From positions 29,884,001-29,948,000 of the forward strand of contig NW_027266297.1 of the NCBI RefSeq assembly GCF_022045235.1: 64,000 nucleotides of DNA. Reading direction: 5' to 3'. Origin of the DNA: Haliotis cracherodii (Eukaryota). Under the pieces are notes generated by a model. It was not told the origin of the DNA. It saw only the letters and a program-made list of their open reading frames with translations, and searched no databases. Position 1 is the first letter of the stretch. Every line of letters begins with the position of its first letter. Below, piece by piece: positions 2,741-62,646 of the stretch. The translations under genes and the position numbers were made by a program.

Positions 2741-2970
2741 CCCGTAGGGATTCTGCAGTAGAATTGGTTCCCAGCAACCTATGCTGGTCGTCAAAGGTGA
2801 ATTAATGGATTGGATGGTTAGACTCCGTGACTAGGTTGATGTCGTGTCTACCCCGACCGTGTGGTTCGTCACTTACAATATCAATCGGTACATGGGTGGG
2901 TCAATCCTCTATGGTGGCACAATTCGCTGTGCATAGTTGTGTCCGTTGCTCAATTCAGAAACAAATGAAC
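2741..2970 (+). mobile_element. Family C retroposon, diverged subfamily-2 copy
   Basis: cccgtagggattc...agaattggttcccagcaacctatgctggtcgtcaaaggtga aligns to the family C 5' end; 3' boundary approximate. Confidence 0.7.
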
Positions 2971-4387: not shown

Positions 4388-6326
4388 CCACAGATTCAAA
4401 TTATGGCAATTCAAATTCAATATAAATTCAAAATGATAATATTTAAATCTTATTTTGTATTTTCATAAAGTGTGTATCAAAATTGTATAAGGTTTGCGAT
4501 GTCTGTGTGAAGTTTAATGCATCTATCTATGAATGGGAATTTTTTATGTCCATTTGATCAGATTGGTACTGGTACTACCAAATGTGTAACTGTAGAAACA
4601 TGTATTTGAAAGATTGAGATAGAAGAACTAAAATTTGAAAATACGTTTTTAAACAAAAAAATGTTTTGCCTCTATACAACACATGTATATTCATATTTTG
4701 AAATATGAATACTTTTTTTGTGATGAATTATCCTGTTGACTAGCTTATATCAAGATCTTAAATAATTGTGACATTCCAATAAATACCATGCTGTTTCATA
4801 AGTCATAACACTTCCTGTTTTGCTTTCAATTTAATTTACTGAGCAGCAATGGAAAGTCTGTTTTCATTCATGCAAATATAATTCAAATTTTCAAATCTAC
4901 AAGAAAAAATAGTTAAAAATTCCCCGAACTATATAAACCTCCCAGATATATACATCTGTCATGAGACCAGCACAGGCAGAAGGGATGTTTGTCCTGCACT
5001 GGAGTTTCATAGTTACAAGCCCCATGGGATAAACAGCTAGAAAAAAATGGCACAGAAGCTGTTTAAACATCCCAGAATCTTGTAAGGGACGAAATCTGAT
5101 CATTTTGCTCTTTGCAATATGTAGGTAAAATGTATACAAAGTTCCATGCCAAAGACAGCCCCCAGATGTGACAAACGTCCTTGCAGCGATAACATCATTT
5201 CCATCCCAAACCGAGTTTAAACAGCTGCATGGCTTTCACTTTAAAGAATGTTGGAGGCTGACAGTTGGGAGGATGAAGCTCATGTAACTCTAAACCGGGC
5301 CAGATTTTACTTATATAGAAACTTACCCTGAAAAACGTTCCTCAGCTGGAAGAGGAATATGTGCCTGTCCTCAACGCCATATTTGGTAATGTGTCCTCGC
5401 CAGCGAAATTGACAAAGAAAATTGATGGACAGAATTGATACCAAAGTGATAGTTGGTGCGGATGCATGTTTTAAAGTAAACATTCTTTGAAATAATTCCT
5501 TTTTTTTTAATTCTGCATTGGAAGGAATTTGGGAAAGTTTTATCAAAATTGTTTGAAATGGGGATGGTTTTTTTAAGATGTAGCAAAGAATCTTGAAAAC
5601 AGAACAAAGTAATGTATTAACCGAGTGTTAAACATTTATGTCTAAATATTCAGGATTTTAATGTTTGGTTGATGGAGAGAAATGTGGTGTCTAAGTTGGT
5701 TTATGTAATGTTTATAAAGCAGAGGGCTCAGTTTCTTTCAAAAGATGTCTAAAGTTTAAAGACGATCACTCCTGAGTGAGAGGAAAGAGTAGAGGATAGG
5801 TGAAATGTCCCAAGTTTATCGTGGGAAAAAAGCATCATGGTACATATATATGCTCCTCATGGTAAAATCATAAAAAATCAAAGGGGAAAAAAGTCATTAT
5901 GATATGCATGCAAAATGGGGATGGAGGTGAGAGGGGAGGGGGAGACTACCAATGACGCTGACATCGACTTTAGTAACTGAGATGATGAAGCTGGTACATA
6001 CACAGAGGATGGAGTTTGTTTGCAAACAGAATTTAGAAGTGGGTGTGTTTGAATGGCATTTTGAGGGGAAGGGGGGATTGAGTGGTGACAAGTTATTGAT
6101 GTGGTCTAGGAGTAGGAATGTATGAGAAATAAGATTGTTGACCTGAACTAAAATTGAAAATTATTTTTGATGGGTTGGGTATGAGGTAGGTGGGTGGTTG
6201 GGTGATAGTTATTGATGGGATGTATGGAGGTGTTGGATGGGATCGAGGATTTAGGCTTGGGTGGGTTGATGGTTGAGGTAAATGGTGGTATCAGACAAAA
6301 GTTGGGTTCGGGTATAGAATCTAGGA

Positions 6327-6570
6327 GACCTGTGAACATCTGGGTTGAGAATTGGTCTTCTGCACCCATGCTTGTCGTAAGAGTTGACAAATGGGATCAG
6401 GTGGTCAGGTTTGCTGACTTGGCTGATGCATGTCATCGTATCCCAACTGCATGGATCGATGCTCATGATGTCAATCACTGGATTGTCTATCCTGACAAGA
6501 TCATTTACAGACTGTCGCTTAGCTGGAATATTGTTGAGTTCAGCGTAAAAAAACAAACAAACAAACAAAC
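6327..6570 (+). mobile_element. Family C retroposon, full length, (AAAC)n tail
   Basis: TSD AATCTAGGA at 6318-6326 and 6571-6579; homologous to 30761 and 62414; no A/B box seen. Confidence 0.92.
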
Positions 6571-6775
6571 AATCTAGGATGTGAGCTTAGACTTTAGGTA
6601 AGGAACCAGGGTTAGATATAGGTAAAGGTGGGTGTAGGGTATTGAATCTAGCATGTGGCATTTCTAGCTAGAGTCTAGATGGAAGGAATTAGGACTGTTG
6701 TGGTTAGAAACAACAGCATGATCTATAACTAGGCTGTATGGTGGTGTGAGAGACTACAGGGCTTGATAGGGTTCA

Positions 6776-7578: not shown

Positions 7579-7740
7579 GGGACGGTGAGAAACCTAGTGG
7601 TTAAAGTGTTCGCTCGTCACACCGAAAACCCGGGTTCGATTCTCGACATGGTTACAATGTGTAAAGCCCATTTCTGGTGTCCCCTGCCGTGATATTGCTG
7701 GAATATTGCTAAAAGAGGCATAAAACCATATTCACTCACT
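7579..7740 (+). mobile_element. Family A tRNA(Asp-like)-derived SINE
   Basis: A-box-like acctagtggttaa, B box ggttcgattc, shared tail, tcactcact end; candidate TSD TCTGATTT (7571-7578, 7744-7751). Confidence 0.9.
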
Positions 7741-10704: not shown

Positions 10705-11170
10705 GCTCTCATTATCTCAAAGGTTCTGATCCCCAAATGCCAAAATCCTGATCCCTTTCTTTTAATGTTTTAGACCCCTTATCTAAAAATCTTAGTCCCC
10801 TGTTGACAAAGTCTCACCCCACTTATCTCAAAGTTATAAGGATAGCCTAGTGGTTAAAGCAATCGCTCCACACACCGAAGACCCGGGTTCGATTCCCGAC
10901 ATGGGTACAAAGTGTGAAGCCCATTTCCGGTGTCCCCCGCCGTGATATTGCTGGAATATTGCTAAAAGTGGTGTTAAACCATACTCACTCACTCACTCAC
11001 TCACTCACTCACTCACTCACTCACTTATCTGAATGCTTTGGCCCCTTATGTCAAAGTCTTGGTCCCCTTCTCTCAGTGTCATAGCCCCTTTATCTCAAAT
11101 TCTAAGTCCCCTTGTATCGAAGTCTTGTCCACATTTCTCAAAGTCTAGACCATTATCTCAAGACTTTGAG
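10705..11170. repeat. Degenerate ~26-bp tandem repeat (ccccttatctcaaagt core)
   Basis: Recurrent cccc-ttatctcaaag motif, interrupted by a SINE. Confidence 0.65.
10840..11024 (+). mobile_element. Family A SINE with long (ACTC)n tail
   Basis: tagcctagtgg A box, ggttcgattccc B box, shared tail, (actc)~11. Confidence 0.95.
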
Positions 11171-15583: not shown

Positions 15584-15885
15584 ACCCATGGTGATTCCGG
15601 TTAGAATTGGTCCCTAGCAACTTATGCTGGTCGTGAAAGGCGATTTGATGGATCGGATGGTCAGAATCCGTCTCTTGCTTGTGGCGTGTCACTGTACCAT
15701 TGTTGTATATGTCACTTAATGGATCTGGTGGTGGAGCTTGGTGACTTGGGTAATTGTGTGTTAATACACCCTGATGATGTGGAGCGTTGCTCATAATATC
15801 TATCATTGGTTGGTCTGGTCCAAACTGCAGAAAGCCTTCCTGTAGCATGAATCATGCTAAGTGTGTCATAGAGCTACAATCATTT
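15584..15885 (+). mobile_element. Family C retroposon, diverged subfamily-2 copy
   Basis: acccatggtgattccggttagaattggtccctagcaacttatgctggtcgtgaaaggcga; gctcat...tctggtcc later in the body. Confidence 0.75.
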
Positions 15886-22179: not shown

Positions 22180-22420
22180 GATCCAGGTCTTCAGCATGTT
22201 TCTTTTAAGAGGGGACTAACAGGATCAGGTGGCCAGGCTCACTGACTTGGTTGATGCATGTCATTCATTGTATCCTAATTGTGCAGATCAATGCTCATTA
22301 TGTCAGTCACTGGATTGTCTGGCCCTGACTAGATTACATACGATTATTTACAGACCGCTGTCATATAGCTGGAGTATTGGTGAGTGCTGTATTAGACAAC
22401 AAAGAAACAAAGAAACAAAA
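22180..22420 (+). mobile_element. Family C retroposon with deleted head
   Basis: gatccaggtcttcagc...taagaggggactaacaggatcaggtggccaggctc...tagctggagtattggtgagtg, A-rich tail. Confidence 0.88.
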
Positions 22421-30351: not shown

Positions 30352-30760
30352 TACATTCGTAGAATATCATCATTGTTACAGGTGTGCATCCTCAGTTACA
30401 TGGATTTACACAAATTGTAAAAAACATTCTCTGCTGTGAAGAATGTGCATCCACACTGAAGACAAAATCATACATTCACACCAGTAATCTGGTTTTATTT
30501 ATGGCATTCCATCGCAGGGTTGCAAACAGCAATCTTTTTTATGTAGAAAAAGGATAGAAACATGTCCTTAAAAAAATAGGCTTTTTTAATTATCTATTGA
30601 AATATGCATGTATTTTGAATGAATAAAAAACACACTTTAAGATGATTTTTTAATGATGCTTGGTAATTAACTTTGAAAATGAACCAATTCCATTCCTTCT
30701 ATCTACTTCAACTGCAAATGCAGAACCAACTGATGTTTTCCTTGCATGTTCATACTTATT

Positions 30761-31032
30761 GACCCGTGAGGATCCAGGGTTGAATAGGTTTTTAGCAACC
30801 CATTCGTGCCGTAAAAGGTGACTGTGCTTGTCGTAAGTGGCGACTTACGGGATCGGGTGATCAGACTCGCTGACATGGTTGATACATGTCATTGTATCCC
30901 AATTGTGTGGATTGACGCTCATGATGTCAATCACTGGATTGTCTTGTCAAGACTCGATTATTTAAAGATCGCCTTCAAATAGATGGAATATTGCAGAGTG
31001 CGGCGTTAAACAGCAATCAAAATCAATCCACA
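30761..31032 (+). mobile_element. Family C retroposon, full length, duplicated head hairpin
   Basis: TSD TCATACTTATT (30750-30760, 31033-31043); starts GACCCGTGAG. Confidence 0.93.
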
Positions 31033-32270
31033 TCATACTTATTGTCAAAAAACACAAATAGCCGAATGCAATTTTTCAGACCTGTCACATACAAAGAGGA
31101 TTATATATGATAAATAAATGTTTTTGCAGTAAACAGGTAAGTCATACCAAACATTTTTCAACAGAGAAGTTCAAGCTGGAGTGATTTACTGAAGAATCTG
31201 GAAATTACAGGAACTGAACAAGGCTGAACTAGCAACTGATTCCATACTTGATTACAAGAAGCCTTTCCTGAAAAGGCAATATCATAATTTATGAGATAGC
31301 TCTGTAAAATACCCAGGAATGTATAGAATTAATTATTTAGAAGTCATGATTAATAACCATTAATTTAGTATCCCAAAAATATATATATTGGTGCAGTGCA
31401 TTAAGTTGATATTTCATATCACAGATATGGCAAAGCTCTACGTGGCTATATCATGTTAGCAGTATTGATTGTGTGTAGCTAAGTGCGAGTAGTATGTCGA
31501 TTACTAGAATTTCCAATAGCGATAGATTTTGTACAGTTGGCATTGTCTCTTCCATTGTGGTGTCAAATCGAGGAACATAGTTAGTGTGTTTACGGCTTGC
31601 CACCAGCTAGTGATTTGCACTCAACTATCAGCTTTCGGAAAGTATTCACACATCTCTCCCTCGGACTTTTAAATTATTCACTTGGTCAAGGTCGACCATA
31701 ATGAAGGATGTGTTTTGGTGTTGTGTTCTATGTCCAGGAACAAGTTTTTGTGAAAACAATTGTTTTGAAGTTTTAGTTAAGTGAATGCTTTATGATTTCA
31801 GAATTGAGTTTTGATGTTCCTTTTATCTGCAACATTTCATTGGAAACAAAAACAATTAAATTTTCTACAATATGTCCCATTTGTATGTTTGCTGTTTGAA
31901 ATTTGTTCCTGGCAAAAATGAACTTTTAGTTTGTTTTTTCCTCCTGTCAGAAAAACGGAATTTCTGAGGCATTATTTTTATCTGATTTATAGTGTATTTT
32001 TGAAGACTTTGATACCATCACTGTGTAAACATGGATGAGATGGTAGTAGATAGCTAGTGTTTAAATGTCAAGGCTGCATGCTGAAAATAAACAATTTTAT
32101 TCTGTCATCAGATATTAAAATGTTGGTCCTAAAAACCCTGATTGACTAACATAGAAACAAAATCGTCTTTTCATCATCATACTTCAAAGGTTGCCAACTA
32201 CTAGTTTCTTTTTAATTTTTAGGAGTATTGAAGTTTATTGCTTGTGGAATACTTGCATAGCCTTCCACTG

Positions 32271-33222
32271 CTATGATTATGTTTAGGGTGGAGAGATGCT
32301 ATATGTTCCTCCGTTTGGGGTAGCCATGATTATGTTTAAGGTGGAGAGATGCTATATGTTCCTCCATTTGGGGTAGCCATGATTATGTTTAAGGTGGAGA
32401 GATGCTATATGTTCCTCCATTTGGGGTAGCCATGATTATGTTAAGGGTGGAGAGATGCTATATGTTCCTCCATTTGGGGTAGCCATGATTATGTTGGATG
32501 GAGAGATGCTATATGTTCCTCCATTTGGGGTAGCCATGATTATGTTTAGGGTGGAAAGATGCTATATGTTCCTCCATTTGGGGTAGCCATGATTATGTTT
32601 AGGGTGGAGAGATGCTATATGTTCCTCCATTTGGGGTAGCCATGATTATGTTTAGGGTGGAGAGATGCTACATGTTCCTCCATTTGGGGTAGCCATGATT
32701 ATGTTTAGGGTGGAGAGATGCTATATGTTCCTCCATTTGGGGTAGCCATGATTATGTTTAGGGTGGAGAGATGCTATATGTTCCTCCATTTGGGGTAGCC
32801 ATGATTATGTTGGGTGGAGAGATGCTATATGTTCCTCCATTTTGGGGTAGCCATGATTATGTTTAGGGTGGAGAGATGCTATATGTTCCTCCATTTGGGG
32901 TAGCCATGATTATGTTTAGGGTGGAGAGATGCAATATGTTCCTCCATTTGGGGTAGCCATGATTATGTTTAGGGTGGAGAGATGCTATATGTTCCTCCAT
33001 TTGGGGTAGCCATGATTATGTTTAGGGTGGAGAGATGCTATATGTTCCTCCATTTGGGGTAGCCATGATTATGTTTAGGGTGGAGAGATGCTATATGTTC
33101 CTCCATTTGGGGTAGCCATGATTATGTTTAAGGTGGAGAGATGCTATATGTTCCTCCATTTGGGGTAGCCATGATTATGTTTAGGGTGGAGAGATGCTAT
33201 ATGTTCCTCCATTTGGGGTAGC
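32271..33222. repeat. 53-bp minisatellite, ~18 near-identical copies
   Basis: ccatgattatgtttagggtggagagatgctatatgttcctccatttggggtag. Confidence 0.97.
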
Positions 33223-33640: not shown

Positions 33641-34776
33641 TTGTGTTACCATGACAATATCCTGATTTACATTGACTTCTGTGTAGATATGGTGAATGAT
33701 AAATAATTTAATCCTTGGGAATTCGGACTCAGATCTCAATATTCTCTCACCCACTTGTATGCTCTCTGAAGAGTTGCACAGATGTAGGGAATCTCTGTGT
33801 GTGCAGAGCTATCACGTCACAAATTGTGCCATACATGATACTAATCATACTTTGCAGTTGCCAAAAAAGTCAAACTTTGAGCCTGTATTGAATATACTCT
33901 TAAAAGATCATAGCTTTAAAAAATATATTTCCCAGTGCATCTATAAGGGTGTGAAGAAATATGACCCAAACAAATAGTGAAATGCATTGTTGGAAAGGAG
34001 ACGGCATGATACTAGATACTTATTTATCAATGTTATATCCTGTGTGGGAATAAACTTGTTGACAAATGGGAATAAACTTGTTGACAAAAGTGAAAGATGA
34101 GATTTTCAACTTTGAAATATAAAATCTTAAAACTGTGACAATGTTTGACTACAGACACTGGACAAGGATCATGTTGATACAGCTTTTATACACAAGTGAT
34201 GGGGTGGAAATATCGTGACCAAGGCTTGTAGATTTTCTTTGATGGACATGTTGCCCATGTATATAGACATGTCAGTTTAAGATAAGTAGTCTTGAGTATA
34301 ATAACTACACAGGTACACATTTCTTCCAGGCAGTAAGACATACAGGTTAATGTCTAGTTGCCTAGGTTATGATATCATCCGTAGACAACAAATACAATTC
34401 ATCAGTATTTTTGAACAAATGACGCCAACATTCCTGTGATGTAGATATGGTTATAGTGTTCAACAATCTGGACAATGTTTGTGGGGGTATACCCCACCTG
34501 ATGATCACCTGATTGAGGAGGGTTGTCAGAACAGGCTGCTGCACGTTGGGATGAGTCTTGATCTGTTGTCACCCAGGTATTATCTTCATTTTACTTATGT
34601 TTATACCTACAACTACCTACCTGCACACCGGCCTAGATAGACGGGGTCACCCAGTGCCAGCATAGCTCACCTGTGTGGTGGGGAGTGTTGTGGCGACTGG
34701 TGGTATTGGATGGGTACATTTGGTGAGGGTGAGGAGGTGTGTGTTGTTGGGGAGGAAGTGGGTTCAGATAAAAAAG

Positions 34777-35760
34777 GTGGGGTGCTGTGAAGTAGGGTGG
34801 GGTGCTGTGAAGTAGGGTGGGGTGCTGTGAAGTAGGGTGGGGTGTAGTGAGGGAGGGTGGGGTGTAGTGAGGTAGGTTGGGGTGTAGTGAGGTAGGTTGG
34901 GGTGTAGTGAGGTTTAAGGGATGTGGTGGGGTAGGGTGGGGTGTAGTGAGGTAGGTTGGGGTGTAGTGAGGTTTAAGGGGTGTAGTGAGGTAGGGTGGGG
35001 TGTAGTGAAGTAGGTTGGGGTGAAGTGGGGTGTGTTGGGTGTAGTGGGGTAGGTTGGGGTGTAGTGAGGTAGGTTGGGGTAAAGTGGGGTGTGTTGGGTG
35101 TAGTGGGGTAGGTTGGGTTGTAGTGAGGTAGGGTGGGGTGAAGTGAGGTAGGTTGGGGTAAAGTGGGGTGTGTTGGGTGTAGTGGGGTAGGTTGGGTTGT
35201 AGTGAGGTAGGGTGGGGTGAAGTGAGGTAGGTTGGGGTAAAGTGGGGTGTGTGGGGTGTAGTGGGGTAGGTTGGGGTGTAGTGAAGTAGGTTGGGGTGAA
35301 GTGGGGTGTGTTGGGTGTAGTGGGGTAGGTTGGGGTGTAGTGAGGTAGGTTGGGGTGAAGTGGGGTGTGTTGGGTGTAGTGGGGTAGGTTGGGGTGTAGT
35401 GAGGTAGGTTGGGGTAAAGTGGGGTGTGTTGGGTGTAGTGGGGTAGGTTGGGTTGTAGTGAGGTAGGGTGGGGTGAAGTGAGGTAGGTTGGGGTAAAGTG
35501 GGGTGTGTGGGGTGTAGTGAGGTAGGGTGGGGTGTAGTGGGGTTTAATGGGGTGTAGTGAGGTAGGTTGGGGTGTAGTGAAGTAGGGTGGGGTGTAGTGA
35601 GGTTTAATTGGGTGTAGTGAGGTAGGTTGGGGTGTAGTGAAGTAGGGTGGGGTGTATTGAGGTTTAAGGGGTGTAGTGAGGGAGGTTGGGGTGTAGTGAG
35701 GTAGAATGGGGTGTAGTGAGGTAGGATGGGATGTAGTGAGGTGGGGAGTAGTAAGGTAGG
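34777..35760. repeat. G-rich ~20-bp minisatellite (gggtggggtgtagtgaggta variants)
   Basis: Seen directly; + strand almost free of C. Confidence 0.95.
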
Positions 35761-39168: not shown

Positions 39169-39978
39169 TCAAAGATTGTGTTACAAATATAAAGTATTTA
39201 TTTGTTTTTTCTGTACTCTATTTTCTACCAGGAATTGCCTTGTTTATTACAAGCTGTTACATATCTACTGCTTTGAATAAAAAAATGTTTTCTCAGCTGA
39301 AAGAGAAAAATTATAAATCTTTTGAAACAGGTGTTCCATTTAGTGCACCAGCTTTGGAGTTCATGTATGAAATAAACAACATATTAACTGCCATGTGTTA
39401 CATAGATTTTATTGGGTGATAGGCACAGAACTGAATATCAAAGATATGTGCTTGCATGACATATTGAAATTGACAAGCTGTGCTGGGAAATGCTGGATGA
39501 ACAACAACATAGTTGCATATTTTGGTTTAGATTACATATGTTAAGAGGATATGAATGTATTTTGTAAGGGTGATGTAGGGTGTAAGGGTGATATAGATAT
39601 ATAAAACCCTGAAATGAGCACCACAAAAGGTGTAATTTTTAGGTCTATTGAAATTGACGATGTGGCTAACAGAGCCTCCACTGTGAAACATTCGACTTAT
39701 GCGTAATGTACAACTGACACTTGAGTGACAGACTGAAAATTTCAGTGTAAGACGTATCAGCTTGGAATGCTCTTTTTGTATATATTTATGATGTAATAAA
39801 TTGGTTATACATTCACCTAAGCTTGAAATAGAAGTGAAATAGACATCATTGATAAAGATGCATTTAGAGAGGGTGGAAATATACCATGTACACTTATATA
39901 ACCCCTGTGGGTTTCTGGCTGAGAATAAGGCCCCGTTCCTCTTGCTGGTAAAGACTCTCTCTCTACATAAGGGATCAG

Positions 39979-40085
39979 GGCCCCGTTTCACTAAGCGATG
40001 GTAATGCTACGTCTTTCGTAACTCCTATACTTTAACATAGACTTACGACAGTCGTAGCCTCACAGTTGCTTTGTGAAAAGGGACC
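39979..40085. mobile_element. ~107-bp palindromic MITE (possibly PIF/Harbinger-like)
   Basis: ggccccgtttcactaagcgat versus gttgctttgtgaaaagggacc; inner gctacg/cgtagc. Confidence 0.7.
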
Positions 40086-40240
40086 AAGGTGGTCGGGCTC
40101 TTTGACTTAGCGATTGCATGTCTTGCAAGCCTTGATTGATGCTCATGCTATCGGTCACTGATTTGAATGGTCCAAACTCCACTATTACAGGCCTCTGTAG
40201 TATGGATTAGAGGAATATTGCTGACTGAGGCATTAAACAG
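40086..40240 (+). mobile_element. Family C retroposon, diverged, head missing
   Basis: ggtggtcgggctc...gatgctcatgct...ggaatattgctgactgaggcattaaac. Confidence 0.75.
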
Positions 40241-47081: not shown

Positions 47082-47219
47082 GTGAGTGAGTGAGTGAGTA
47101 TGGTTTTACGCCGCTTTTAGCAATATTCCAGCAATATCACGGCGGGGGACACCAGAAATGGGCTTCACACATTGTACCCATGTTGGGAACGAACCCGAGT
47201 CTTCGGCGTGACGAGCAAA
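47082..47219 (-). mobile_element. Family A SINE, 5'-truncated inside the tRNA head
   Basis: Perfect TSD GTTTGATAGA (47072-47081, 47220-47229); A box missing. Confidence 0.95.
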
Positions 47220-49019
47220 GTTTGATAGAAGGTGTTTAAATGTCATGTTGTAAATTTGCTGGAACAAAACTTGCACCTCACTAACAATGTCACCCAAGCC
47301 GATCCATGCTATTCACTCAAACGACACCCATTCACACTCTAGCTCACTCAAACACCCACTGACTCACTAACTCAAACATCCATCGAACCACTCTCTAGCT
47401 CACCAGTACAATACCCAAGAGCACATTGATCTACCATATACCTACTAAACTATGCTAGCATGAATAACTTTATCCGCTCAGAGCTGTGCCTATATAACTC
47501 GTACACTGAAAATTATATTGTACGTGGTCCAGTAACCATGACGATGGGATGTATTGAACAGCTGGGGGTGGAGGTTTTAGGTGTATATCATTGTTACGTA
47601 GATATATAGCTCTGCAGGCCCTCTATGTTGCATCCATCAGTTATGGGCCAATTTTCTGCCGCGGTTGCTGATATTTTGGCAATTTGAGTAATTTACTTTT
47701 AATTTGCTTGGGCTTTGTGGTGAAGGGGTCGAGTAGATATTACTCTTCATAGAAACTCATGACTGTGGAAATAATAAATGAGCTGAATACCCATTTCGTG
47801 TTTTTTGGTATTTTTCCACTTTTTTTATTTGTCAATATCATGACTTTGTCAGGATTGTGATGTAGGGTGTTAAATGTTCATTGTCAGTGATTCTTCAGCT
47901 GTCAATAAGTACTGAGTATTAGTTCATGTCCATTACTTCGTCATGGTTGTGGTTGGGAAATATTATTCATTGTCCTAATTCAAGAGATCTTAAGCTGTAT
48001 CTTTTGATTGAATTCATTCATAAATAGAGATGTTTGGTGTGACATTAAAATTATTTCCGAGAGCTTGCTTCATGCAAGGTATATACGAGTTAGTCCCGTC
48101 CACAGATGGGAAATTTCACCTGTGTATGACTATTATTGTTATGGATTTAAGCACATTGAAAAAACGCAATATGTTATTTTAACTTATTTAATTATTCATT
48201 TTGTATACCTTTTGCTTAACAAGTGTTTTAAATATACCTATGCATAGTGTCCAATGTCTCAAAACCTATGACCTTTGACGCAAAAGAGTTATAATTTATG
48301 TGTTGTACATTTCAAGCTGACAAGTCTGTCAGTTACGTTACGACATTTTTGATACATTTTCTGACATCCTCCTTAATGAAAAATGTCTATTGTCATGTAA
48401 TTCATAAAGCATGATCCAAATAACTGCTTCCTGTGGAATTAAAAGTAAATTCCCAAATAAAATATGTCTACTAAACCATGTCAACTTGAGATATTAAATC
48501 TATCATCAGACTGGCCCTTTTCCCCAAAGTTGCTGACACAAACATGCTGATAGTATTGTGACATGTGCATCATGGTCTTGACAGGCTGAGTGTAACATAT
48601 ATGCTATGAGTTACAATAGACCCACAAGCCCCATTTCACATTGTGTGTCAAACAGTTTGTTCGTAAACATGCATTAATCATAACATTTGCGTATGGAAAA
48701 TTATGAAGCACTGATTAAAAGTTAAATACTGTCTAAAATGATTGTAATTATATTGTGTTTATCAGTTGACATATGGGAAGGACAATTATTTATTTTGTGA
48801 AATTACTAAATTGTGATAATTATGATAATATGGGCATGGTAGTTTAGCAAGCATATTTGACTCATTCGTCATTTGTGCCACTAATTGAAATTTGGGGGTT
48901 TATGTTTGATATTGATAGCATTGTTGAGTGAAATATGTGTATCAACTTCATTGAGAGGTAAAAGCATTTTTGACATCACTATAACAACAATAACAGTGAT
49001 GATGATGAACATCTTGTTC

Positions 49020-62413: not shown

Positions 62414-62646
62414 GCCCCGTGAAGATCCAGGTTAGAATAGGTCTTCAGCAACCCATGATTGCCGTAAGATGGAATCAGGAGCTAAGGCTTGCTGACTTAG
62501 TTGATGCATGTCATCATATCCCAATTGCGTGGATTGATGCTCATGATGTCAATCACTGGATTGTCTAACCACACTTGATTATGAACAGACTGCCGTCATA
62601 TAGTTAAAATATTGCTGAATGGAGCATTAAACAACAAACAAACAAA
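62414..62646 (+). mobile_element. Family C retroposon, both ends intact (short deletion after the head), (AAAC)n tail
   Basis: TSD tccaagttRtatg (62401-62413, 62647-62659; 1 mismatch); starts GCCCCGTGAAGATCC. Confidence 0.92.

What the first reader, a model, noticed from the sequence alone, without database searches (positions are those of the whole stretch)
30761..30855. Family C: a retroposon without Pol III boxes, headed by a covarying pseudoknot RNA (candidate self-cleaving ribozyme)
SEEN: family C (~240 bp; copies at 2741, 6327, 15584, 22180, 30761, 62414 plus 3' fragments) has TSDs, a microsatellite tail and the same 3' stem-loop as the tRNA SINEs, but no tRNA head or A/B box. The three TSD-bounded copies (6327, 30761, 62414) all start at the same G. 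Head consensus: GA-CCCGT GAAGATC C GGGTT AGAATA GGTCTTC AGC AACCC ATGC TTGTC GTAAGA GGCGA CTA ACGGG-A-TC. It folds as an outer stem CCCGT/ACGGG closing at the 5' end, a stem GAAGATC/GGTCTTC crossed by GGGTT/AACCC (H-type pseudoknot), and a hairpin TTGTC/GGCGA (alternative register GTCGT/GCGAC). The 2741 copy replaces two A-T pairs of the second stem with G-C (AGGGATT/GGTTCCC); 15584 shares one of these (GGTGATT/GGTCCCT). KNOWN: several non-LTR clades (R2, RTE) free their 5' ends from host transcripts using HDV-like or twister ribozymes. The hairpin-CTA-closing-strand end recalls HDV P4-J4/2-P2, but the strand order here is not HDV, hammerhead or twister. From memory only, GTCGTAAGAGGCGACTAA also occurs at the 5' ends of some invertebrate RTE-type elements. 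INFERENCE: a non-autonomous element that cuts itself out of Pol II transcripts with an uncharacterised catalytic fold and borrows a LINE enzyme through the SINE tail.
Basis: partly seen in the sequence, partly recalled or inferred. Interest (0 to 1): 0.9.

Follow-up and report, generated by a model that had tools for sequence, protein, structure and literature searches.

The report
Known LP-SINE with double-pseudoknot head
This is one copy of a very abundant mollusc jumping element of a kind published in 2016 (an 'LP-SINE'); its first ~70 bases form a conserved, doubly knotted RNA also found in other retroelements, and what that RNA does is untested, with self-cutting the leading guess.

Summary
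Family C is real. It is a 245-270 bp SINE with target-site duplications, a microsatellite tail, a uniform 5' end at G, and no tRNA head or Pol III boxes. Its 17-nt core occurs about 60,000 times in this genome. This type is already published as 'LP-SINEs' (Matetovici 2016, PMC4758252), including in abalone. This scan has flagged the same family on other windows, and one follow-up there called it ordinary.

What I add: a metagenome scan gave about 100 diverged homologues of the head in at least 12 sequence families. The outer stem and the GGGTT/AACCC pairing show no covariation.

The supported fold is two tandem pseudoknots:
- The 5' C-run pairs with the loop of stem S2. This pairing is conserved but does not covary.
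- A 4-bp hairpin (AGCA/TGCT) has a loop (CCC) that pairs with the GGG lying after the GTCG...CGAC hairpin. This pairing covaries strongly.

Rfam has no match, and the HDV, twister and hammerhead strand orders do not fit. Self-cleavage stays plausible (about 35%) but could not be tested here.

The parts
30750..30760 (.). 5' target-site duplication TCATACTTATT
   Evidence: Identical 11-mer at 31033-31043
30761..31032 (+). Complete family C (LP-SINE) copy, duplicated-hairpin subfamily
   Evidence: 87% identical over its full length to a young copy, L049:82-335; bounded by the duplication
30761..30851 (+). Head module: ~69 nt in the family consensus, 91 nt here because of a 22-nt duplication
   Evidence: A profile built from metagenome homologues alone hits 30759-30847 at E=5e-4;
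30762..30766 (+). S1 5' strand (ACCCG). Proposed to pair with 30775-30779, which here reads CAGGG, a decayed CGGGG
   Evidence: A C-run at the extreme 5' end and a G-run right after S2a are present in every family. They are conserved, so there is no covariation
30768..30774 (+). S2 5' strand (GAGGATC). Pairs with 30787-30793 (GGTTTTT; consensus GGTCTTC)
   Evidence: On alignment A1, pair types at one position are UA:13, CG:10, GC:8, AU:5; 84.5% of cells are paired. Partner-swap test 0/5000
30775..30779 (+). S1 3' strand, inside the S2 loop
30780..30786 (+). Conserved single-stranded block (TAGAATA in the consensus; TTGAATA here)
   Evidence: AGAATA is at least 90% conserved in 72 homologues and was not part of the search pattern
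30787..30793 (+). S2 3' strand
30794..30797 (+). S6 5' strand (AGCA). Pairs with TGCT at 30825-30828; the first-unit copy at 30803-30806 is decayed
   Evidence: S6 variants across families: AGCA/TGCT, TCCG/CGGA, CTCG/CGAG, TGTA/TGCA, CGTA/TGCG. All 4 pairs change on both sides
30799..30801 (+). S5 5' strand (CCC, in the S6 loop). Pairs with GGG at 30849-30851 to form the second pseudoknot
   Evidence: S5 variants: CCTGG/CCAGG, CCAGG/CCTGG, CCTCC/GGAGG, CCTTC/GAAGG, CCTGA/TCAGG, CCCAT/ATGGG. Partner-swap test 0/5000. The middle pair is UA:49, AU:13
30802..30823 (+). First copy of the duplicated 22-nt unit (S6 3' strand plus hairpin S4)
30824..30845 (+). Second copy of the 22-nt unit; hairpin S4 is GTCG 30830-30833 / CGAC 30841-30844
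   Evidence: S4 is nearly invariant: 97.8% paired with no variation
30849..30851 (+). S5 3' strand (GGG)
30970..31012 (+). LINE-type 3' tail shared with the window's tRNA-derived SINEs
   Evidence: BLAST matches to query positions 210-252 at 7686, 10937, 12864, 42919(-) and 47145(-). A and B boxes are visible upstream at 10840-10900
31033..31043 (.). 3' target-site duplication
6327..6570 (+). Full-length family C copy; duplication AATCTAGGA at 6318-6326 and 6571-6579
62414..62646 (+). Full-length family C copy with an internal deletion in the head; duplication TCCAAGTTGTATG / TCCAAGTTATATG
22180..22400 (+). Copy truncated or rearranged at the 5' end
2741..2900 (+). Head and part of the body of the older sister family C2 (S2 is GGGATT/GGTTCCC)
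15584..15830 (+). Sister family C2 copy
39897..40239 (+). Decayed additional copy

Best explanation
The element is an LP-SINE: a short non-autonomous retroposon moved by a LINE through its 3' tail. Its head is not a small-RNA gene. It is a ~69-nt module that also caps the 5' ends of some LINEs and other SINEs.

The head is an RNA structure kept by selection. In consensus numbering:
- S1, 1-6 with 15-20. This is the 5' end paired into the loop of S2, closing with G1.U20.
- S2, 8-14 with 27-33.
- S6, 34-37 with 43-46, abutting S2.
- S5, 39-41 (in the S6 loop) with 67-69.
- S4, a 48-62 hairpin, followed by CUAA.

In brackets: [[[[[[.(((((((]]]]]]......)))))))<<<<.{{{.>>>>.((((.......))))....}}}

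These are two tandem hairpin-loop pseudoknots that could stack into one rod, starting at the first nucleotide of the element.

Shown: identity as this SINE type, the uniform 5' end, S2/S6/S5 covariation, and the absence of Pol III boxes and of any Rfam match.

Inferred: the constraint is on RNA pairing and persists in non-coding SINEs, so the module acts on the RNA rather than as a DNA promoter or a translation signal. The most likely single mechanism is definition of the 5' end of a read-through or Pol II transcript by self-cleavage just before G1. My odds:
- self-cleavage, about 0.35;
- a non-catalytic 5'-end function, about 0.25;
- DNA-level promoter, about 0.2.
For: Type: Matetovici 2016 describes duplication-flanked, tandem-repeat-tailed SINEs in Haliotis, Ostrea, Saccostrea, Littorina and scallops. 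They have a ~68-70 bp non-tRNA head shared with LINE 5' ends, and body or tail shared with tRNA SINEs. All features I could test here match.

Homologues: 120 metagenome loci carry the core. About 100 of them have the whole module with fixed spacing. A profile built from them alone recovers the window copies at E 5e-4 to 2e-3, with alignments running from CCCCGTG through TAGAATAGG to the hairpin.

Structure:
- Partner-swap test on 18 family representatives: S5 4.61 against 3.73+-0.19; S2 4.42 against 3.38; S6 3.56 against 2.26. Each is 0/5000.
- Gap-free, unfitted alignment A2: 91.5% paired against 86.5+-0.5; 51 cells changed on both sides against 19.7+-3.4 (0/500); slid controls 18-40%.
- Alignment A1, which includes abalone: 89.6% against 76.3+-1.0; 105 against 40 cells (0/500).
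- Two families carry ~55-nt and ~190-nt insertions between the 5' block and TAGAATAG, yet keep S2 complementarity and still begin at the C-run.
- Within abalone, C1 to C2 changes S2 from AA/UU to GG/CC and re-registers S5 from CCC/GGG to CUAU/AUGG.

Precedent for a ribozyme role (from papers): HDV-like ribozymes at the 5' ends of R2, RTE and L1Tc (cited), and twister variants at the 5' end of the RTE-clade element Perere-3, with duplications abutting the cleavage site.
Against: - No cleavage evidence of any kind.
- No Rfam hit at E<=10 for five different heads, and no fit to the HDV, twister or hammerhead strand order.
- S1 is conserved but does not covary (879/5000). It rests on position and complementarity only.
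- S6 and S5 could be alternative conformers rather than a simultaneous pseudoknot.
- The youngest and most successful abalone subfamily tolerates a 22-nt hairpin duplication inside the second pseudoknot. Other families tolerate large loop insertions. That suits a peripheral region but is not expected of a tight core.
- The homologues were retrieved with a pattern covering S4, so conservation of S4 is partly built in.
- Their source organisms are unidentified, so the breadth across phyla rests on the paper, not on my data.
- I could not obtain the published LP or LINE head sequences, so I could not align against them. No supplement was held.
Confidence: 0.6

Rival explanations
1. The head is an internal Pol II promoter taken from a LINE (the published 'LINE promoter' idea). 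It works as DNA, and the RNA pairing is secondary.
For: Proposed by the authors who described the type. It sits at +1, like the internal promoters of I- and jockey-type LINEs (my knowledge). The related case Pr77 of L1Tc is both a promoter and a ribozyme.
Against: A DNA promoter does not explain compensatory changes in three helices, including a long-range one kept across a 190-nt insertion. A dual role is not excluded.
Confidence: 0.2
2. The double pseudoknot is a non-catalytic 5'-end structure. It might shield an uncapped 5' end from 5'-3' exonucleases, or serve as a handle for the retrotransposition machinery, for example at second-strand steps or in RNP assembly.
For: The first nucleotides are buried in a helix (S1). 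The structure is kept in non-coding SINEs. From my knowledge, R2 RNA has a conserved 5' pseudoknot bound by its protein.
Against: The same head is reported on LINEs of different clades (Nimb, I, RTE) with unrelated proteins. That argues against a specific protein handle. There is no direct evidence either way.
Confidence: 0.25
3. One reading: outer stem 3-7/65-69, stem 8-14/27-33 crossed by 16-20/37-41, plus a hairpin.
For: All of these helices can be drawn in the abalone C1 consensus. The nested part (outer stem, S2, S6, S4) is the minimum-free-energy fold of a C1 copy at -24.1 kcal/mol, z = -2.2.
Against: - Partner-swap test: outer stem 2.86 against 2.83, crossing helix 3.53 against 3.54, neither significant.
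- In most homologues the 3' strand is CCAGG or GGAGG, which cannot pair with the 5' CCCCG.
- In abalone C2 the 3' strand became AATGG, breaking the outer stem with no compensating change.
- The AACCC segment is the S6 loop, and its covarying partner is the 3' strand.
Confidence: 0.05
4. The head is a decayed tRNA-derived or tRNA-like head. It would be either transcribed by Pol III through the B-box-like GGGTTAGAAT, or cut by a host tRNA-processing enzyme such as RNase P.
For: - GAAGATCCGGGTTAGAATAGG resembles the variable-loop and T-arm region of the window's tRNA SINE, GAAGACCCGGGTTCGATTCCC.
- The head is about 72 nt, and one C1 copy folds as a cloverleaf.
- Stacked, S1 and S2 make 12-13 bp, the length of an acceptor plus T arm (inference).
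Against: - There is no A box, and the invariant C of the B box is an A in all families.
- ARAGORN and the Rfam tRNA model find nothing.
- Some metagenome families show T4 runs right after the head, which would stop Pol III.
- The cloverleaf is not conserved.
Confidence: 0.08

Closest known systems
LP-SINEs (Matetovici et al. 2016, Genome Biol Evol 8:253; PMC4758252): Haliotis Hdi/Hmi_LP, Ostrea, Saccostrea Sgl_LP, Littorina Lsa_2, scallop MESC SINEs
   Same: - Mollusc host.
- Duplication-flanked short retroposon with a tandem-repeat tail.
- ~68-70 bp non-tRNA head at the exact 5' end.
- Tail shared with tRNA-derived SINEs.
   Different: Nothing found that differs. The paper proposes a promoter role and describes no RNA fold. 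I could not align against its sequences.
Pr77 of L1Tc/ingi (trypanosomatid LINEs)
   Same: A ~77-nt module restricted to the extreme 5' end and shared between otherwise different elements. It is structured and pseudoknotted.
   Different: Pr77 folds as an HDV-like ribozyme and has shown promoter and cleavage activity. This head does not fit the HDV strand order, and nothing about it has been assayed.
HDV-like ribozymes at the 5' ends of R2, RTE and Baggins
   Same: - The 5' end of the element coincides with the first base of a helix closed by a G.U pair.
- Double pseudoknot.
- Hairpin, then CUAA, then a closing strand, like P4, J4/2 and P2.
   Different: There is no P3/L3 hairpin between the P2 and P1 strands, and no P1.1. 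The partner of the strand after CUAA lies in a hairpin loop, not next to P1. No Rfam HDV-family hit.
Twister variants at the 5' end of Perere-3 (Liu et al. 2021, PMC8501958)
   Same: A ribozyme module capping an RTE-clade LINE, with duplications next to the cleavage site. The abalone consensus can be laid out as P2 (CCCG/CGGG), P3 (S2) and P4 (S6) with a CCC loop.
   Different: The P2 equivalent cannot form in the other families. The conserved twister loops (GUCCCAAGC, GUAAA, GAGGG) are absent. There is an extra hairpin where twister has 5 nt. No Rfam twister hit.
Schistosome Sm-alpha SINEs and animal retrozymes (hammerhead-bearing non-autonomous retroelements)
   Same: Non-autonomous retroelements that carry a small structured, self-processing RNA.
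   Different: Those carry hammerhead cores (CUGAUGA...GAAA), which this head lacks.

Membership tests
LP-SINE | Short non-autonomous retroposon with variable target-site duplications and a 3' simple-repeat tail | tested here: met
LP-SINE | Head not derived from tRNA, 5S or 7SL; no A or B boxes | tested here: met
   No ARAGORN tRNA. No Rfam match at E<=10. There is only a B-box-like GGGTTAGAAT, which lacks the invariant C
LP-SINE | First ~68-70 bp homologous to the 5' ends of LINEs (Nimb-17_LMi, I-3_DR, RTE-9_CPB) | tested here: inconclusive
   The reference sequences were not obtainable. The module length of 69 nt fits. Homologous heads lie 238 nt upstream of a gag-like ORF with a CCHC motif (L199) and ~330 nt upstream of an RT fragment with a DUF6451 hit at E=1.2e-5, below the curated cut-off (L155). 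None of 161 head copies sampled in the abalone genome leads into a LINE
LP-SINE | Shares body and/or tail with tRNA-derived SINEs of the same genome | tested here: met
   The last ~40 nt are shared with tRNA SINEs at 10937 and 47145(-)
HDV-like ribozyme | Strand order P1-P2-P3-L3-P3'-P1'-P1.1-P4-J4/2(C)-P2', with P1 starting at +1 | tested here: not met
   Threaded by hand on the abalone head and on the commonest metagenome family (CCCCGTGTGGGTT... type). No hairpin lies between S2a and S1b, and no C-rich L3 is available to form P1.1. No Rfam HDV or CPEB3 hits
Twister ribozyme | P1-L1(UAA)-P2-L2-(P3)-P4-L4-P4'-L2'-P2'-L1'-P1' with conserved loops and T1/T2 pseudoknots | tested here: not met
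   Compared with Table 1 of PMC8501958. The P2 equivalent exists only in abalone C1, and the conserved loops are absent. No Rfam hit
Hammerhead ribozyme | CUGANGA and GAAA core around a three-way junction | tested here: not met
   The core motifs are absent from the head (sequence read directly). No Rfam hit
tRNA-derived SINE | tRNA-related head with A and B boxes | tested here: not met
   Contrast the true tRNA SINE at 10840-10985
Any self-cleaving ribozyme | Site-specific self-scission yielding 5'-OH and 2',3'-cyclic phosphate ends | not testable with these tools
   All runs offered were contigs, which cannot show RNA ends

The most novel reading that the evidence does not exclude
The ~69-nt head is a new class of small self-cleaving ribozyme. 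It would be a tandem double pseudoknot that cuts immediately 5' of its own first nucleotide. It would have spread among LINEs of several clades and among SINEs in molluscs and other animals, letting promoter-less elements free themselves from read-through transcripts.
Probability: 0.3. Interest if true: 0.9.

Novelty: new variant of a known kind. Interest (0 to 1): 0.6.

Why it matters
The element itself is known and ordinary. It is one of about 60,000 copies.

What could matter is the head. The authors who described LP-SINEs left open which polymerase makes them and what the head does. They also left open why an identical ~70-nt cap sits on LINEs as different as Nimb, I and RTE.

Three helices covary, including a long-range one. 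That points to function as a folded RNA rather than as a DNA promoter alone. The fold defined here can be tested directly by mutation and rescue.

If the head cleaves, it would be a new ribozyme class and would explain how these SINEs do without Pol III. If it does not cleave, it is still an uncatalogued, widespread structured RNA of retrotransposons and worth an Rfam entry.

Tried and rejected
- Rfam at gathering score on the whole window, and at E<=10 on five heads (abalone C1, the duplicated subfamily, and two metagenome families): nothing relevant.
- ARAGORN: no tRNA.
- Threading by hand onto HDV-like, twister (against Table 1 of PMC8501958), hammerhead and pistol topologies: none fits all families.
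- Fixed-column counting of the pseudoknot helices on MAFFT alignment A1: unreliable, because loop lengths differ between families. I replaced it with a gap-free subset and a register-free partner-swap test.
- Nested minimum-free-energy folds: z-scores only 0.35 to -2.2, and the folds differ between families. This is expected if pseudoknots matter, so it is not informative.
- RNA evidence: all 24 runs offered were Logan contigs. Laying four RNA-labelled runs showed very high contig depth on the SINE body but gave no information on starts or ends.
- Search for a LINE carrying the head in the abalone genome:
  - a pattern for the 3' strand seen in most metagenome families (RAAHCWGG after the hairpin) gave 3 decayed hits;
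  - PF07530 gave none;
  - of 161 sampled heads, all lead into the SINE body or are broken SINEs.
- Pfam, PDB and Atlas searches on ORF pieces downstream of metagenome heads gave only weak leads: DUF6451, and PRE_C2HC at score 0.80.
- The published head sequences: no supplement was held, and no paper text contains the motifs.
- A B-box-like match in the body (GGATCGATGCT) is not conserved in family C2, so I took it as chance.
Full report
**What is at the coordinates**

Window 30761-30855 is the 5' end of a complete short retroposon spanning 30761-31032. It is flanked by an 11-bp target-site duplication, TCATACTTATT, at 30750-30760 and 31033-31043.

- Two more complete copies, at 6327 and 62414, are also bounded by duplications and begin at the same G.
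- 22180 is truncated at the 5' end, 18915 is a 3' fragment, and ~39897-40239 is a further decayed copy.
- 2741 and 15584 carry a related head but belong to an older sister family, which I call C2.
- The window copy has a 22-nt tandem duplication inside the head (30802-30823 and 30824-30845). This marks the youngest subfamily, whose members are 93-96% identical to one another.

**Abundance and 5' end**

The 17-nt core TGYCGTAARAGGCGACT has 60,194 exact matches in the 1.18-Gb genome, against 0 for the reversed control. Of 37 young full-length copies, 31 start with G and 28 with GAC. Where a duplication can be called, it most often ends right before that G, and no regular extra base is present.

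**No Pol III head**

ARAGORN finds no tRNA in the window. Rfam gives nothing at gathering score, and nothing relevant at E<=10 on two abalone heads.

The window does hold true tRNA-derived SINEs, with A box TAGCCTAGTGG and B box GGGTTCGATTCCC. They share only the last ~40 nt with family C. That shared tail is the likely handle for a partner LINE.

**It is a published type**

Matetovici et al. [quoted passage not shown]

- These are duplication-flanked, tandem-repeat-tailed SINEs in Haliotis, Ostrea, Saccostrea, Littorina and scallops.
- Their first ~68-70 bp are shared with the 5' ends of the LINEs Nimb-17_LMi, I-3_DR and RTE-9_CPB.
- Their body or tail is shared with tRNA SINEs.
- The authors suggest a promoter role, and they mention the L1Tc Pr77 promoter/ribozyme as a parallel.

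I found no later paper on the head. I could not get their sequences. So membership rests on matching features, not on an alignment.

This scan has noted the same family on other pieces of this genome. One follow-up (s1-823202) filed it as an abalone LP-SINE with one conserved hairpin and no support for a pseudoknot. I had reached the LP-SINE identification independently.

**Diverged homologues**

One metagenome scan with the core pattern returned 120 loci.

- About 100 of them carry the whole module with fixed spacing: a 5' block CCC(C)GTG, then 7 nt, then CGGG(G); a block TAGAATA; 7 nt; a 4-bp hairpin; the GTCG...CGAC hairpin; then T plus AAA and a short strand.
- They fall into at least a dozen sequence families.
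- A profile built from these alone finds the window's copies at E 5e-4 to 2e-3. The alignments reach well beyond the pattern used in the search.
- The source organisms are not given. Some contigs carry animal-type exons and LINE remnants. I do not claim which phyla they come from.
- A few of the 120 loci (for example L125, L177, L114) look like chance matches.

**The fold that the homologues support**

In abalone consensus numbering the fold is:

[[[[[[.(((((((]]]]]]......)))))))<<<<.{{{.>>>>.((((.......))))....}}}

| Helix | Positions | Variants seen across families | Status |
|---|---|---|---|
| S2 | 8-14 / 27-33 | GAAGATC/GGTCTTC (abalone C1), GGGGATT/GGTCCCC (C2), GTGGGTT/GACCCAC, GCTGGCT/GGCCAGC, GTGGGCT/AGCCCAC, GCAGGTT/GTCCTGC, GTGGGCA/TGCCCAT | covaries |
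| S6 | 34-37 / 43-46 | AGCA/TGCT, TCCG/CGGA, CTCG/CGAG, TGTA/TGCA, CGTA/TGCG | covaries |
| S5 | S6 loop with the strand after the S4 hairpin | CCC/GGG, CCTGG/CCAGG, CCAGG/CCTGG, CCTCC/GGAGG, CCTTC/GAAGG, CCTGA/TCAGG, CCCAT/ATGGG | covaries |
| S4 | 48-51 / 59-62 | GTCG/CGAC | nearly invariant |
| S1 | 1-6 / 15-20 | ACCCG/CGGGT or CCCCG/CGGGG | conserved; does not covary |

Because S1 is conserved everywhere, it can be neither confirmed nor refuted by covariation.

**Numbers**

- Partner-swap test on 18 family representatives, free of alignment register:

| Helix | Self | Permuted | Permutations reaching the observed value |
|---|---|---|---|
| S5 | 4.61 | 3.73+-0.19 | 0/5000 |
| S2 | 4.42 | 3.38+-0.19 | 0/5000 |
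| S6 | 3.56 | 2.26+-0.20 | 0/5000 |
| S1 | 3.36 | 3.17 | 879/5000 |

- Gap-free alignment of 72 sequences, not fitted to any structure: 91.5% of cells paired against 86.5+-0.5 in shuffles. Cells changed on both sides number 51 against 19.7+-3.4 (0/500). Slid controls give 18-40%. The central S5 pair is UA:49, AU:13.
- Alignment of 46 sequences that includes abalone: 89.6% against 76.3+-1.0, and 105 against 40 cells changed on both sides (0/500). One S2 position shows UA:13, CG:10, GC:8, AU:5.
- These changes include transversions, so CpG decay cannot account for them.
- Sequences within a family are related, so cell counts overstate the number of events. The lists of distinct helix variants above are the fairer measure.

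**Further support**

Two metagenome families looked at first as if they lacked the 5' half. In fact they carry it further upstream. They have ~55-nt and ~190-nt insertions between the CGGG block and TAGAATA. Their S2 strands stay complementary across the insertion, and their flanks diverge just upstream of the C-run. So in every family the element begins at S1.

Within abalone, C1 to C2 changes the 3' strand from ACGGG to AATGG and the S6 loop from ACCCA to ACCTA. It re-forms S5 in a shifted register, CTAT/ATGG.

The abalone C1 head has two C-runs (3-5 and 39-41) and two G-runs (16-18 and 67-69), and either pairing scheme can be drawn. The nested version (outer stem, S2, S6, S4) is even the minimum-free-energy fold of a C1 copy. 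It does not survive comparison with the other families.

**What it is not**

- HDV-like: the hairpin, then CUAA, then a closing strand does recall P4, J4/2 and P2, and G1.U20 recalls the G.U at the base of P1. But there is no P3/L3 between the relevant strands and no P1.1.
- Twister: the abalone consensus can be mapped onto P2, P3 and P4. The P2 equivalent cannot form elsewhere, and the conserved twister loops listed in PMC8501958 Table 1 are missing.
- Hammerhead: the core motifs are absent.
- Rfam: nothing for heads from two further metagenome families either.

**Function**

Covariation in non-coding SINEs argues for a role of the folded RNA itself. It argues against a purely DNA-level promoter or a translation element.

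Three observations are what a 5'-cleaving ribozyme would show. The module sits at the exact 5' end. It is carried by LINEs of several clades according to the paper. Purine-rich single strands are conserved (AGAATA, and AA after CGACT, each at least 90% and outside the search pattern). Known cases of such ribozymes exist for R2, RTE, L1Tc and Perere-3.

None of this is evidence of catalysis. My odds are:

| Role | Odds |
|---|---|
| Self-cleavage | 0.35 |
| Non-catalytic 5'-end role | 0.25 |
| DNA-level promoter | 0.2 |
| tRNA-like or host-processing readings | under 0.1 |

The public runs offered were contigs only. They show heavy representation of the SINE body in RNA-labelled runs and say nothing about ends.

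**Limits**

- S4 conservation is partly imposed by my search pattern.
- The hosts of the homologues are unknown.
- The link to LINEs in my own data is weak. There is a gag-like ORF with a CCHC motif 238 nt after a head in L199, and an RT fragment with a sub-threshold DUF6451 hit after a head in L155.
- The young 1260-aa LINE family of this genome could not be fetched.

**Verdict**

The element is known and ordinary. The head is a conserved tandem-pseudoknot RNA that I did not find described, and it is a fair candidate for a new self-processing module.

Noticed in passing
window 10840-10985 (+) and 47100-47235 (-): tRNA-derived SINE with clear A and B boxes and a CTCA-type repeat tail. It shares the last ~40 nt (GCTGGAATATTGCT...GCGGCGT.AAAC) with family C, so the two probably use the same partner LINE.
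   Followed up: partly
window 32273-33222 and 34776-35746: Two minisatellites: a 53-bp unit x18 with 97% matches, and a G-rich 20-bp unit x49. They account for the GC and GC-skew peak at 32-36 kb.
   Followed up: no
own genome, e.g. G000:C34:29225549-29226304 and about 150 other places: A very young LINE family. RVT_1 hits at ~1e-46 have identical 1260-aa open frames at many loci, with 15,279 first-look candidates. The DNA could not be fetched, so its 5' end was not checked for the head.
   Followed up: no
L103, L162, L173, L193, L198, L132 (metagenome loci): A family in which the same head is followed directly by a tRNA-like part with A and B boxes (GGTAGTCTAGTGG ... GGTTCTACCCC), like the scallop MESC SINEs in the paper. 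L132 carries two heads in tandem.
   Followed up: partly
L095, L120, L150 and similar loci; L127, L138, L159, L161 and similar loci: Families with ~55-nt (TAAG-rich) and ~190-nt (CT-rich) insertions inside the loop of the first pseudoknot. S2 pairing is kept across the insertion.
   Followed up: yes
L199:8816-10293: A head lies 238 nt upstream of a gag-like open frame ending in ...RCTKCRKFG (a CCHC knuckle), broken by one in-frame stop. It is probably an I- or jockey-type LINE carrying this head. The contig ends inside ORF1.
   Followed up: partly
window 30801-31200: In four RNA-labelled public runs from the species label of the best DNA-holding runs (organism A) and from two others (C, D), contig word depth on the SINE body is 130,000-235,000, against under 700 on the flanks. 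The label 'RNA' is a guess by the tool.
   Followed up: no
window 30808-30811/30819-30822, and genome-wide: A T/C polymorphism in the hairpin (TGTCG against TGCCG; roughly a third of the first 100 listed genomic matches are TGCCG).
   Followed up: partly
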